DNA from: Salpingoeca rosetta
Taxonomy: Eukaryota > Protista > Choanoflagellata
Length of the DNA stretch: 64,000 nt
Direction of reading: 5' to 3'
Assembly (NCBI GenBank): GCA_033442325.1
Contig: JAWQFM010000008.1
Span: forward strand, 1,895,309 to 1,959,308
A program made the position numbers and the translations under genes. Of the stretch, positions 1,189 through 7,602 are shown in pieces. The notes under the pieces were generated by a model. It worked only from the letters and a program-made list of their open reading frames with translations. It did no database searches and was not told the DNA's origin. How positions within the stretch are numbered: the stretch's first letter is position 1; each line of letters starts with the position of its first letter.

Positions 1189-2390
1189 ATGACGGTCAGT
1201 CGCTGCTGCCCGCCCTGCCCTACTGACCACCATCACTGGGGCAACTGACACTGCAGTTGCAGTGCCCTTTGACGAGTGCAGCTACACGGCGCTCACACCG
1301 CATTTTCGCAGTTGTCCAGTACACGCCAACAGCACTGGTCACACAACCGACAACAACAACAGCAACAACAACAGCAGCGCTCAGACACCACTGAACATGC
1401 AGCAATCCACGCACACGAGCTGACTCACGCACGCACGCACCCACACACGCACTCACATTCGCTTACTCTCTCTCTCTGTCTCCCACCAACGCGTACACAA
1501 ACACACCTTCTCATACACACCTCCTCACGCACACACACAAACGCCTGCACACACGTGTTCGCAAGCAGGACCGTGAGAGCTCGTGGGCGTTGGCACCTGA
1601 GCGTGGCCTGGACCAGCTTGAACGGGAGGAGCCCAACGAGTGGGACGGCATCTACAACGAGGTCCCCACCTTTGAGCCAGACCTCATGTCCTCGCCAGAG
1701 CTGCGCACGCGTGCACGGTCCTCCGGCTACGGCAAGAGCGTGCCTGTGGTGAAGCGCGTTGTGCTCGAGCCCAACGACCTTCGTCCCTGGGAGGAGGTGC
1801 CCACCTTCAAGCCCGAGCTGCAGGAGAGCCCCATCCGCAAGAGTGCCCCATCGTCCAACTACGGCCGCGCCATCCCCACCAGGAAGGAGGTGGCCCCCGA
1901 GATTCCCAAATTCAAACCAGAGATCCAGCGCTCCCCGTCTGCTCAGCGACAGTTCTCGACCGTCAAGTCGTCTGGCTACGGCCGCGTGTCCGCCGCTGTC
2001 TCCCGCCCCTCCTCTGCGCCCTCGCTCAAGTTCCGCCCACAAATGCCCAAGAGCAAGCTGCGGCAGTCGGTCAAATCGTCTGGGTACGGGCGCGTGCTGC
2101 CTGACGCAAAGCGGCCCTCGTCTGCGCCCCGGCGCTCCAACAGCATGGACACGTCCACGACGCCGAGCAAGTTTGTGCCGCGCTACTCGCTGCTCATGGA
2201 CAGATCAGACAAGGAGGCTGCAGAGGACGCGAAGAACAAGGAGACGGAGGAGGGCGAGTTTGTGCTTGACGGCCTCTCCTCAGTCAACTCGCGGTCAAAA
2301 CTCGAGCTCAGCTTCGGCCTCCCTCCAAACCACACCCCATCCCCAAAACAAAAGTCAGTCATGTCACTCCGCACGACGCTGTCGTTGTCG

Positions 2391-2453
<63 letters not shown>

Positions 2454-2456
2454 CAG

Positions 2457-2545
<89 letters not shown>

Positions 2546-4309
2546 GCTCTGCGCTGCTGATTGTGGAACAACGTCCAACATTTCCTTTTGAATGAAGCCT
2601 CACCATCACCCGCTCACCATCCCCCCTTCCACCAATTGCGTGTCCCCACCACCTCTCGATTGCGTCAGGGCGCTGCGGGACTCTGCGTCGTCGAGCAAGT
2701 ACGGGCTTGCGTCGCCGCCGGTTGCGCCCCGCCAATACAAGGAGCGTGGCCCCGTTGACTTCTCCTTTGACAAGTCCTCGTCCGTGCTCGACCAGCCCCT
2801 GGAGCCCTTTGCCACAAAGACGCCACTCGCAGACAAGGTGCAGTGTCGCACCCGCGCGTGTGTGCACATCGTTTCTTGTGGTGCTGTTGTGTATGGGAGT
2901 TGTAGCCTCGTTTTCTCGCGAGCTTCGTTGTGTGCTGGCCGGTTAAGGTTGAATTGCAAGTGCACTGATGAATACGCTTTTTGTCTTCTCGCCGATGCCG
3001 CCACCAAACCACTCGTCTCACCTATTTCGCACGTCCTGCCATGGGACGTTCCCCCGCTTCTCTCAACAGGTGCGCTCGTCGCAGTACGGCAAGGCGCCGC
3101 CACCACGCGGGGAGAAGCCAGCGCCCAAGCAGCCCGAGCCGCGGTGGTCGCTCACCTTCAAGGGCGAGGTCCCACGCGACCCGCCAGCAGCGCCCCGCAA
3201 CCAGCTCACAGAGAAGGTGCATGCATGGATCGTGCGCTGCTGTCCTCACAGTGCTTGTGTGTGTATGTGTGGTTGTTTGTGTGTGAGTGTGTGGTTATTT
3301 GTGTGTGTTTGTGTGGTTGTTTGTGTGTTTGTATGTGTCCCCCCCCCTTTTTTTTTGTGTGTGTGTGGTTGTTTGTGTATGTGTGTGTGTGGCTCAAGTG
3401 TGTTTGTATCCGCGTGCCTAAGCTGCTGGGCCACCGGTTCACGCCCGTCGTTGTTACTTCATGTGCGTGCTGCGTTGCTCACGTTCTGCGTATTGCTTTC
3501 CTTCCATGATTGGCGTCACGTTGGTTCAGGTTGCCTCCCACGGCTACGGCCAGGTTTCGCCCGAGAAGGGCCCTCGCTTCGAGATGGAGGTGCCCCCACT
3601 TTGGATCCCTTCCAACAACCCCCGCGTCAAGCTGTCAGAGCCAACGCCAGTGCCACGCTCCCGTCTCAACGACTCGGTATGTGTGCGTGTGTGTGTGTGT
3701 GTGTGAAGTGAGCGTGAGATGCGTGTATGCGTGTATGCGGGGGTGATGCTTGCGAGTGAGGCGTGCGCGTGTGTGATTATGTGGGGAGGGTTGTCATTTG
3801 CATCGACACGTTTCGCTATCATTTATGCGTTCCATGCTTCCGCGCTTGTGCCCCCCCCGCAGGTTCGCAGTCACTACGGCACAGACTATGACCCAACTTC
3901 CCTGTACGCTTTGTAAGTCAAGCACCTGCTGCTTGTCGTGGTGGTGGTAGTGGTGGTCGTTGCTTCTCACGTGACTCAGTGCTGCTCTTGCTTTGCCATG
4001 GCATTCCAATGCGTGTGTGTACATCGTATCCTGCCTGCTTGTCCTCTCGCTTTCCTGCACGCTTTCTCATTTCCTTTCCTGCCACCACCACCACCACCCC
4101 TGCTGTTGCTGCCCTGTGTGTTGTGAACGCCAAACAGCAACGGGGAGGACGAGTTTGATGACGAGGCTGAGGAGGGCATTGACGGGCCGTTTGTGCAGGA
4201 GGGCGAGGAGCACGCGCAGGAGAACGGGGACGAAGTTGTTGTGGACGAGGGAGACGAGGAGGAACAGGAGGAGGAGGAGGAGGAACAGGAGGAGTTTGAG
4301 GAGTACTAG
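1189..4309 (+). CDS. Uncharacterised SSxYG-repeat protein with acidic C-terminal EEY tail (491 aa), putative microtubule-associated protein
   Basis: Phase-consistent GT-AG exons 1189-1194, 1569-2353, 2669-2837, 3070-3216, 3530-3676, 3863-3912, 4138-4309 (1476 nt). Eight SSxYG-like repeats. Ends ...EEQEEFEEY*. Confidence 0.8.
2384..2546. repeat. (TTG)n intronic microsatellite
   Basis: About 160 nt of TTG with one interruption. Confidence 0.95.
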
Positions 4310-5005
4310 CCAGCCTGTGCCATTTGCTTTGGTTATCGCCACCCACCGCCGTCACCGGTCGCCACCCATCAAATCACCTGAACCCACATCATCATCATCG
4401 ACATCATCATCGACATCATCATCGACATCAACATTATCGCTTCACCGGCGCCGACAAGCGCAACTTGTGTGCAAACTGGGTGGAAGCGGGAATGGGATGG
4501 CTCTTGTTCTGCGTCGTGTGCGTGGCGTTGTGTTGTGTAGTGTCTCTTTGGTGTCCTGTTTTTTTTTTTCTTTTCTCTTGGACTGCTTCTTGTCGTTGTT
4601 GATGTTGTTCGTTTTTTTCTCTTTGTGACTGCTACGTATGCCTCACTTGGTGGGCCTGCCTCCCTCCATCGTCGTCTTGTTCCATCCATGCCTGTTGTTG
4701 CTTGTGTCATGTGTTGTTCGAGCACAACATGTGGCTTTGACAATGAAGGATTGAACCTTTTGACATATGGATGGAGACAACTCTGTGTGTGTGTGTGTCT
4801 GTGTGTGTGTGTGTGAGTGTGAGTGTGTGTGTGTGTGTGTGTGAGTGTGACATGATGTGACAACGCTTGCACGACAACAACGACAAAGACACCACCACCA
4901 CACACACTACCAACCAAGTGGCAACGAAAATTCATGGATAATTTTAGCAAACTATCACTAATCCACCCTCCTGCGACCACGCTGGGAAGAGAGACGAGCA
5001 CGACG

Positions 5006-7602
<2,597 letters not shown>

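What the first reader, a model, noticed from the sequence alone, without database searches (positions are those of the whole stretch)
3863..4309. Alpha-tubulin/EB-like EEY C-terminus on a non-tubulin protein
Seen: splicing 3912 to 4138 (TT|C, in phase) adds a highly acidic exon ending GDEEEQEEEEEEQEEFEEY-stop. Retaining that intron would instead stop at ...SLYAL. Known: terminal EEY/F motifs of alpha-tubulin, EB1 and CLIP-170 bind CAP-Gly domains, and the tubulin tail is a substrate of detyrosination and glutamylation enzymes. Inference: a tubulin-tail mimic that could recruit CAP-Gly proteins or tubulin-code enzymes, possibly switched by intron retention.
Basis: partly seen in the sequence, partly recalled or inferred. 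Interest (0 to 1): 0.75.

Follow-up and report, generated by a model that had tools for sequence, protein, structure and literature searches.

The report
Conserved EEY end on choanoflagellate protein
A single-copy, disordered repeat protein found only in choanoflagellates (PTSG_03445 of Salpingoeca rosetta) does end in the tubulin-like letters Glu-Glu-Tyr, and that acidic-plus-aromatic end has been kept across most of the group, so it is probably a working docking signal, most likely for CAP-Gly domains, though no binding has been shown.

Summary
The 3912/4138 junction (TT|C = Phe) and the end EEFEEY-stop are exactly those of the public gene model PTSG_03445 (Salpingoeca rosetta, 491 aa, "hypothetical protein"). 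Transcriptome-derived orthologues run straight through the same junction.

The family has no Pfam domain and no relative with a solved structure. It is predicted to be disordered, is single-copy in this genome, and has so far been found only in choanoflagellates.

- 20 of 43 non-redundant full-length members end in Tyr or Phe, against 4.5% Tyr+Phe in the rest of the tails.
- 9 of 12 named species have this end.
- It occurs in both halves of the family tree.
- Position -2 is Asp or Glu in 17 of the 20, as in EEY, ETF and EEF. Meanwhile the tail changes from 56 strongly acidic residues to a few barely acidic ones.

This is the signature of a selected C-terminal short linear motif. The same genome has alpha-tubulin ending EEY, at least 20 CAP-Gly domains, a vasohibin and many TTL-family genes.

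Binding is untested. The proposed intron-retention switch has no support. RNA reads could not be consulted. The first stage also noted this gene from an overlapping window. Verdict: new member of a known kind, of moderate interest.

The parts
1189..1194 (+). Exon 1: ATG ACG (Met-Thr), donor GTCAGT
   Evidence: Matches residues 1-2 of P0001; sequence
1569..2353 (+). Exon 2: N-terminal body with four P-x-F-x-P-x-L ... S-S-x-Y-G modules; ends in split codon AA|G, donor GTCAGT
   Evidence: Residues 3-263 of P0001. This exon was the query that found the family
2669..2837 (+). Exon 3 (acceptor gcgtcAG at 2667-2668): fifth SSxYG module
   Evidence: Residues 265-320 of P0001
3070..3216 (+). Exon 4: sixth module (VRSSQYG...)
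   Evidence: Residues 321-369 of P0001
3530..3676 (+). Exon 5: seventh module (VASHGYG...)
   Evidence: Residues 370-418 of P0001
3863..3912 (+). Exon 6: eighth module (VRSHYG...SLYA), ends in split codon TT|
   Evidence: Residues 419-434 of P0001
3913..4137 (+). Last intron, 225 bases, phase 2, GTAAGT...aacAG. If it were retained, the TAA at 3914-3916 would stop translation
   Evidence: Same position and phase in the relative L023
4138..4309 (+). Exon 7: acidic disordered tail of 56 residues plus stop
   Evidence: AlphaFold2 pLDDT under 50 for residues 435-451 and 460-491
4298..4309 (+). Terminal motif Glu-Glu-Tyr (GAG GAG TAC) and stop TAG
   Evidence: Conservation of [DE]-x-[YF]-COOH

Best explanation
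The gene (window 1189-4309, seven exons) is PTSG_03445 of Salpingoeca rosetta. It is the single-copy member of a protein family seen so far only in choanoflagellates. The protein is intrinsically disordered. Its basic, Pro/Ser-rich body (pI 9.65) carries eight copies of a short module, each a short helix followed by S-S-x-Y-G, and it ends in an acidic tail. The extreme C-terminus is a selected short linear motif, [Asp/Glu]-x-[Tyr/Phe]-COOH (EEY in S. rosetta). This is the same class as the ends of alpha-tubulin, EB1 and CLIP-170. Most likely (inferred, not shown) the free carboxylate, the aromatic side chain and the acidic residue at -2 dock into the GKNDG pocket of one or more of the many CAP-Gly domains encoded in this genome. 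The repeat body would then carry a CAP-Gly partner to wherever the body binds. Shown: the gene model, the disorder, the taxonomic range and the conservation of the end. Inferred: the reader domain. Unknown: what the repeat body binds.
For: The junction and end are identical to the public model. There were 62 phmmer hits in 1.84 billion representatives, and every named one is a choanoflagellate. There is one locus in the genome. 20 of 43 non-redundant full-length members end in Tyr/Phe, against 4.5% Tyr+Phe in the preceding 40 residues. Position -2 is Asp/Glu in 17 of the 20, while position -1 varies (E, T, A, S, I, V), as in the known ligand ends EEY, ETF and EEF. On a tree built without the last 40 residues, the motif lies in both the Craspedida-type and the Acanthoecida-type halves, with median end branches of 0.78 changes per site. 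The tails are otherwise unalignable: 56 residues in S. rosetta, 35 in L023, and only a few in P0009 and P0026, yet the end persists. The tail is disordered and therefore accessible. The genome has alpha-tubulin ending GEEY and 33 CAP-Gly matches, at least 20 domains, many with an intact GKNDG/GKNNG motif. Precedent: SLAIN2, a basic Ser-rich disordered protein whose conserved last Tyr is needed to bind the CLIP-170 CAP-Gly domains (PMC3115796).
Against: There is no binding evidence of any kind. About half of the members lack the motif: Salpingoeca urceolata ends EEDDD, Stephanoeca diplocostata ends QTLE, and eight Acanthoecidae-type members end EQTTIL. The motif is therefore dispensable in some lineages. 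Several ends (HEAY, EDAY, DGAY, VGEF) are weaker matches than EEY, and only 13 of 43 fit the stricter acidic pattern that I recall from the ELM resource (the pattern is from memory). [DE]-x-aromatic-COOH also fits a class III PDZ ligand. The family has no conserved SxIP motif and no known microtubule-binding domain, so a link to microtubules rests on the end alone.
Confidence: 0.45

Rival explanations
1. The conserved end is a C-terminal docking motif for a different reader. One candidate is a class III PDZ domain ([DE]-x-hydrophobic-COOH); another is a reader not yet known.
For: The pattern [DE]-x-[YF]-COOH fits. One clade ends in T-x-L (EQTTIL), which looks like a class I PDZ ligand.
Against: The EQTTIL end is homologous to an internal E-x-T-T-x-L-P-L motif that lies upstream of the DEY end in sister lineages, so it is not a motif that depends on being C-terminal. 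An aromatic last residue is unusual for PDZ ligands (established knowledge).
Confidence: 0.2
2. The tail is a substrate or decoy of tubulin-code enzymes: the last Tyr is removed by vasohibin, re-added by TTL, or the Glu stretch is polyglutamylated by TTLLs.
For: The genome has a vasohibin gene and 27 exon matches to the TTL family. The S. rosetta tail is Glu-rich like known non-tubulin TTLL substrates (established knowledge).
Against: TTL recognises the folded tubulin dimer, not a tail alone (established knowledge). The poly-Glu stretch is not conserved in the family, whereas the last 3 residues are. This reading does not exclude the main explanation.
Confidence: 0.1
3. The tail works through charge, for instance by folding back on the basic repeat body as an autoinhibitor. 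The last Tyr would then be kept for another reason, such as phosphorylation by an acidophilic tyrosine kinase.
For: The body has pI 9.65 and the tail pI 4.05. Acidic residues before a Tyr are typical of many tyrosine-kinase sites, and choanoflagellates are rich in tyrosine kinases (established knowledge).
Against: Many members keep the [DE]-x-Y end with hardly any acidic tail, for example P0009, P0026, P0067 and P0095. A Tyr at the very last position lacks the +1 to +3 residues that kinases and SH2 domains use (established knowledge). Only the end position is enriched in Tyr/Phe, not the tail as a whole.
Confidence: 0.15
4. Intron retention switches the motif on and off: retaining the last intron would produce a tail-less protein ending SLYAL.
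For: The in-frame TAA lies right after the donor. The last intron is kept at the same codon in a relative that lacks three of the other introns.
Against: The stop is an automatic result of a phase-2 GTAAGT donor. In L023 the donor is GTCAGT and there is no immediate stop. No retained-intron isoform was seen among the database proteins of transcriptome origin. Reads could not be consulted.
Confidence: 0.05
5. The EEY end is a chance product of an acidic low-complexity tail.
For: Acidic tails are common, and one species alone would prove nothing.
Against: 20 of 43 members end in Tyr/Phe against a 4.5% background. The motif is kept across long branches and in both major clades.
Confidence: 0.03

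Closest known systems
EEY/F-motif ligands of CAP-Gly domains (alpha-tubulin, EB1-3, CLIP-170/Bik1)
   Same: A disordered acidic tail whose last residue is Tyr or Phe, with Glu/Asp at -2. Conserved among orthologues. The organism's own alpha-tubulin ends GEEY.
   Different: No tubulin, CH/EBH, CAP-Gly or zinc-knuckle domain. The family is restricted to choanoflagellates. Binding has not been tested.
SLAIN1/SLAIN2
   Same: A largely disordered, basic, Ser-rich protein with a conserved terminal Tyr. In SLAIN2 that Tyr is required for CLIP-170 CAP-Gly binding (PMC3115796).
   Different: No detectable sequence relation. No conserved SxIP-like motifs. SLAIN2 uses a Trp near the end instead of acidic residues, whereas this family uses the acidic type.
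Repeat-type microtubule-associated proteins (tau/MAP2/MAP4 repeats, MAP6/SAXO Mn modules)
   Same: A disordered basic body with a short motif repeated every 36-51 residues.
   Different: No Pfam match to any of these families, and no match of the family profile to any solved chain, ciliary microtubule inner proteins included. A microtubule-binding role for the SSxYG modules is only a guess.

Membership tests
EEY/F-type C-terminal motif (CAP-Gly ligand class) | Aromatic residue (Tyr/Phe) at the extreme C-terminus | tested here: met
   TAC followed by TAG at 4304-4309. 20 of 43 family members end in Tyr/Phe.
EEY/F-type C-terminal motif (CAP-Gly ligand class) | Acidic residues just before the aromatic residue (at least -2) | tested here: met
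   S. rosetta has EEFEEY. Position -2 is Asp/Glu in 17 of the 20 members that end in Tyr/Phe.
EEY/F-type C-terminal motif (CAP-Gly ligand class) | Motif conserved among orthologues while the flanking tail drifts | tested here: met
   9 of 12 named species. Present in both halves of the tree, with tails that cannot be aligned.
EEY/F-type C-terminal motif (CAP-Gly ligand class) | Motif lies in an accessible disordered tail | tested here: met
   AlphaFold2 with the family alignment gives pLDDT under 50 for the tail. The Atlas model has mean pLDDT 0.41.
EEY/F-type C-terminal motif (CAP-Gly ligand class) | Direct binding to a CAP-Gly domain that depends on the terminal aromatic residue | not testable with these tools
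   This needs a pull-down or calorimetry with and without the last Tyr.
alpha-tubulin / EB1 / CLIP-170 protein families | Their domains (Tubulin and Tubulin_C; CH and EBH; CAP-Gly and zinc knuckles) | tested here: not met
   No Pfam family in any exon or in any of 37 family members.
SLAIN family | SxIP-like EB-binding motifs in the basic Ser-rich region | tested here: not met
   No [ST]-x-[IL]-P in the S. rosetta protein, and none conserved in the family.
Tau/MAP2/MAP4 or SAXO repeat proteins | Match to the tubulin-binding repeat or STOP/SAXO profiles | tested here: not met
   No such Pfam hit even at E up to 1 or up to 0.1 over 37 members.
Class III PDZ ligand | [DE]-x-hydrophobic-COOH that binds a PDZ domain | tested here: inconclusive
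   The pattern fits. Binding cannot be tested here.

The most novel reading that the evidence does not exclude
Choanoflagellates may run a lineage-specific CAP-Gly/terminal-tyrosine network. In this reading, the genome's unusually many CAP-Gly domains do not (only) read tubulin. Several of them reportedly sit in odd fusions such as receptor phosphatases and Phactr-type PP1 cofactors. They would also read this ancient, choanoflagellate-only disordered adaptor, whose [DE]-x-Y end predates the Craspedida/Acanthoecida split. The S. rosetta EB1-like gene seems to lack an aromatic end. If so, this protein could partly take EB1's place as the non-tubulin EEY hub.
Probability: 0.12. Interest if true: 0.75.

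Novelty: new member of a known kind. Interest (0 to 1): 0.45.

Why it matters
Only a handful of protein families are known to carry EEY/F ends, namely alpha-tubulin, EBs, CLIP-170 and SLAINs, and these ends organise the microtubule plus-end network. A further conserved carrier, in the closest unicellular relatives of animals and in a family with no other annotation, has three uses:
- It gives that family a testable handle: delete one residue and look for lost partners.
- It offers a candidate ligand for the many orphan CAP-Gly domains of choanoflagellates.
- It warns that antibodies to tyrosinated tubulin, such as YL1/2, may also detect this protein in S. rosetta. From general knowledge, the YL1/2 epitope is a C-terminal aromatic residue preceded by acidic residues.

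Tried and rejected
The junction and the retention idea therefore remain untested at the read level in S. rosetta itself. No tool reported any place as human-like.
- Complex prediction of the tail (P0001 452-491) with the p150Glued/CLIP-like CAP-Gly domain of L001 gave no verdict (score 0.20, under the mark, controls not run). This is no evidence either way.
- Pfam on each exon and on 37 members found nothing.
- A family profile against all PDB chains found nothing.
- The ESM Atlas gave no usable look-alike by features, and structure matches were all below TM 0.25.
- A profile search and a search with the C-terminal half for relatives outside choanoflagellates found none. These searches are limited by word sharing and by length.
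- A paper search for PTSG_03445 found nothing.
- SxIP motifs: none conserved, so I dropped the idea of an EB-dependent plus-end tracker.
- My first guess for the exon 2/3 junction (donor 2358, acceptor 2598) was wrong. The database model uses donor 2354 and acceptor 2668.
- The joined spliced model was never typed or searched. Exons were used by reference, and the identical database protein P0001 stood in for the whole.

Full report
**What is in the sequence.** The window is eukaryotic DNA of about 55% G+C with short GT..AG introns full of (TG)n. On the + strand between 1189 and 4309 lies a seven-exon gene.

Exon 6 (3863-3912) ends in TT and is followed by the consensus donor GTAAGT. The acceptor aacAG ends at 4137. 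Exon 7 starts with C, which makes Phe, and then encodes 56 residues that end EEFEEY-TAG. Reading into the intron instead gives ...SLYAL-TAA.

**Is the junction real?** A search with the large exon found the NCBI protein PTSG_03445 of Salpingoeca rosetta (P0001, 491 aa, "hypothetical protein") at 100% identity. This confirms the organism named in earlier notes of this scan.

I translated each exon on its own and located it in P0001. The seven pieces tile the protein without a gap, and residues 264 (AA|G) and 435 (TT|C) are the split codons. This corrected my first guess for the exon 2/3 junction.

I did not type or search a joined model. The exons were used by reference, and the identical database protein stood for the whole.

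Independent support at the mRNA level comes from complete transcriptome ORFs of Microstomoeca roanoka, Hartaetosiga balthica and Salpingoeca infusionum. All three run straight through the junction (Y-A/S-F/Y-N-G/T-acidic-E-F-D).

A Tara Oceans metagenome contig of a 72%-identical relative (L023) has exons 3-6 fused into one. It keeps the last intron at the same TT|C codon and again ends EEY.

**What the protein is.**
- No exon and none of 37 family members matches a Pfam family.
- A family profile matches no chain in the PDB.
- The ESM Atlas model has mean pLDDT 0.41.
- AlphaFold2 with the family alignment gives mean pLDDT 54.7 and pTM 0.17. It shows only short helices, four of which sit just before an S-S-x-Y-G motif, and the tail is below 50.
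- The body (residues 1-435) is basic (pI 9.65), rich in Pro and Ser, and carries eight S-(S/H)-x-Y-G modules spaced 36-51 residues apart, apart from one 100-residue gap.
- The tail (436-491) has 31 Asp/Glu, no Lys/Arg and pI 4.05.
- The gene is single-copy in the genome.
- phmmer over 1.84 billion representative proteins found 62 relatives. Every one that carries a name is a choanoflagellate, from both Craspedida and Acanthoecida.
- A profile search and a search with the C-terminal half added nothing outside the group. These searches are limited in reach, so "choanoflagellate-only" is provisional.

Among 43 non-redundant members of 380 residues or more, 18 end in Tyr and 2 in Phe. Tyr+Phe make up 4.5% of the preceding 40 residues.

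| Species | C-terminal residues | Acidic + Tyr/Phe end |
|---|---|---|
| S. rosetta | FEEY | yes |
| M. roanoka | LEEY | yes |
| S. infusionum | FEEY | yes |
| H. balthica | IETY | yes |
| Craspedida sp. UC1 | PAEY | yes |
| S. helianthica | HEAY | yes |
| S. punica | FESY | yes |
| Codosiga hollandica | DETF | yes |
| Didymoeca costata | VGEF | yes |
| S. urceolata | EDDD | no |
| Stephanoeca diplocostata | QTLE | no |
| Acanthoecidae sp. 10tr | TTIL | no |

The table draws.

Position -2 is Asp/Glu in 17 of the 20, and position -1 is free. This is the pattern of the established CAP-Gly ligand ends EEY, EEF and ETF; C. hollandica even ends in the CLIP-170-like DETF.

I built a tree from the sequences with the last 40 residues removed, so that the tail could not influence it. 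It splits into a Craspedida-type and an Acanthoecida-type half. The motif occurs in both (15 of 24 and 5 of 19 members), with median terminal branches of 0.78 changes per site. This was the quick tree, because the careful search did not finish.

The rest of the tail is not conserved. It has 56 strongly acidic residues in S. rosetta, 35 in L023 and 34 in M. roanoka. In some members it shrinks to a few residues with almost no acidic run, for example ...PILYVEEY and ...ISYGDEIY. A motif fixed at the very end of a freely drifting, disordered tail is what a selected C-terminal short linear motif looks like. Chance is excluded for practical purposes.

The motif was probably present in the choanoflagellate ancestor and lost several times. 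Some "other" ends are gene calls that run into an intron (P0008), so losses are somewhat overcounted.

**A second motif.** Acanthoecida-type members share E-x-T-T-x-L-P-L near the end. In the Stephanoecid-type it is followed by an acidic stretch ending DEY or GEF. Eight Acanthoecidae-type members end inside it (EQTTIL), and two end just after it. The TTIL end is therefore a truncation that lost the distal motif, not a swap of one C-terminal ligand for another.

**Context in the same genome.**
- Alpha-tubulin (L013) ends GEEY, and three beta-tubulins end EEYDD or EEYED.
- There are 33 exon matches to CAP-Gly, at least 20 domains, and many have an intact GKNDG/GKNNG/GKHDG motif. These include an N-terminal p150Glued/CLIP-like one (L001) and one followed by a long coiled-coil-like region (L002).
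- A vasohibin gene and 27 exon matches to the TTL family are present.
- Earlier notes of this scan report CAP-Gly domains in unusual fusions in this genome. I did not check those architectures, only the domain count.
- The EB1-like gene (L019) seems to end ...DDEEQHS with no aromatic residue and no donor before the stop.

**How it most likely works.**
- Shown: a disordered, single-copy, lineage-restricted repeat protein with a conserved [DE]-x-[YF]-COOH end.
- Inferred: the end is read by a domain that needs the free carboxylate and the aromatic ring. The only well-established reader of acidic-aromatic C-termini is the CAP-Gly domain. The structures of p150Glued and CLIP-170 CAP-Gly domains with EB1, CLIP-170, alpha-tubulin and SLAIN2 ends show the same docking of the last aromatic residue, and deleting one Tyr abolishes SLAIN2-CLIP-170 binding (PMC3115796).
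- Working model, at about 45%: the tail recruits a CAP-Gly protein to wherever the repeat body binds.
- Unknown: what the body binds. A microtubule-lattice role is suggested only by its tau-like layout and has no sequence support.

**Rivals.** The alternatives are another reader such as a PDZ domain, use by tubulin-code enzymes, charge-based autoinhibition with a phosphorylatable Tyr, and chance. They are weighed in the rival section.

The intron-retention switch is unsupported. The immediate stop is the automatic result of a phase-2 GTAAGT donor. The relative L023 uses GTCAGT and would read on for about 28 codons.

**What did not help.** The complex prediction of the tail with the L001 CAP-Gly domain stayed under the mark.

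**Verdict.** The protein is already in public databases as a hypothetical protein, and I found no paper that mentions it. I rate it a new member of a known kind, an EEY/F-type terminal motif on an otherwise unannotated family, of moderate interest. A single-residue deletion experiment in a genetically tractable organism would decide the matter.

Noticed in passing
window 2380-2547: Intron 2 of the gene holds a (TTG)n run of about 170 bases with one interruption. Nearly every intron of the gene also carries (TG)n microsatellites.
   Followed up: no
window 4934-6900, + strand: The next gene downstream encodes a Ribosomal_S2 (PF00318) protein in at least three exons. It has a presequence-like N-terminus, so it is probably the mitochondrial uS2.
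   Followed up: partly
L019 (G000:C33, about 622.6 kb): The EB1-like gene of S. rosetta appears to end ...ESDDEEQHS-TGA. It lacks the aromatic EEY end of animal EB1, and no GT donor lies just before the stop. A second, weaker EB1 match (L020) was not examined.
   Followed up: partly
L005, L010, L012 (also L004): A group of paralogous CAP-Gly domains (V-G-K/R-R-V-x-V-Q-G-Y-x-C...) sits at the end of open frames that carry repeated acidic 'QLYDMGD' motifs upstream. This looks like a lineage-specific CAP-Gly expansion.
   Followed up: no
L023 1229-2193: In a Tara Oceans metagenome relative (72% identical), exons 3-6 of the S. rosetta gene form one exon, so three introns are absent there. The last, phase-2 intron is kept at the same codon.
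   Followed up: partly
P0033, P0035, P0048, P0055, P0094, P0038, P0096 and the EQTTIL group (P0010, P0034, P0043, P0047, P0049): A second conserved tail motif, E-x-T-T-x-L-P-L, is specific to Acanthoecida-type members. Several lineages end in it or right after it and have lost the distal acidic-Tyr end.
   Followed up: partly
P0001 residues 45-50, 90-94, 125-133, 165-169: AlphaFold2 places a short helix just before each of the first four S-S-x-Y-G motifs. The repeat unit is P-x-F-x-P-x-L, then the helix, then K/R-S-S-x-Y-G-K/R. Its binding partner is unknown.
   Followed up: no
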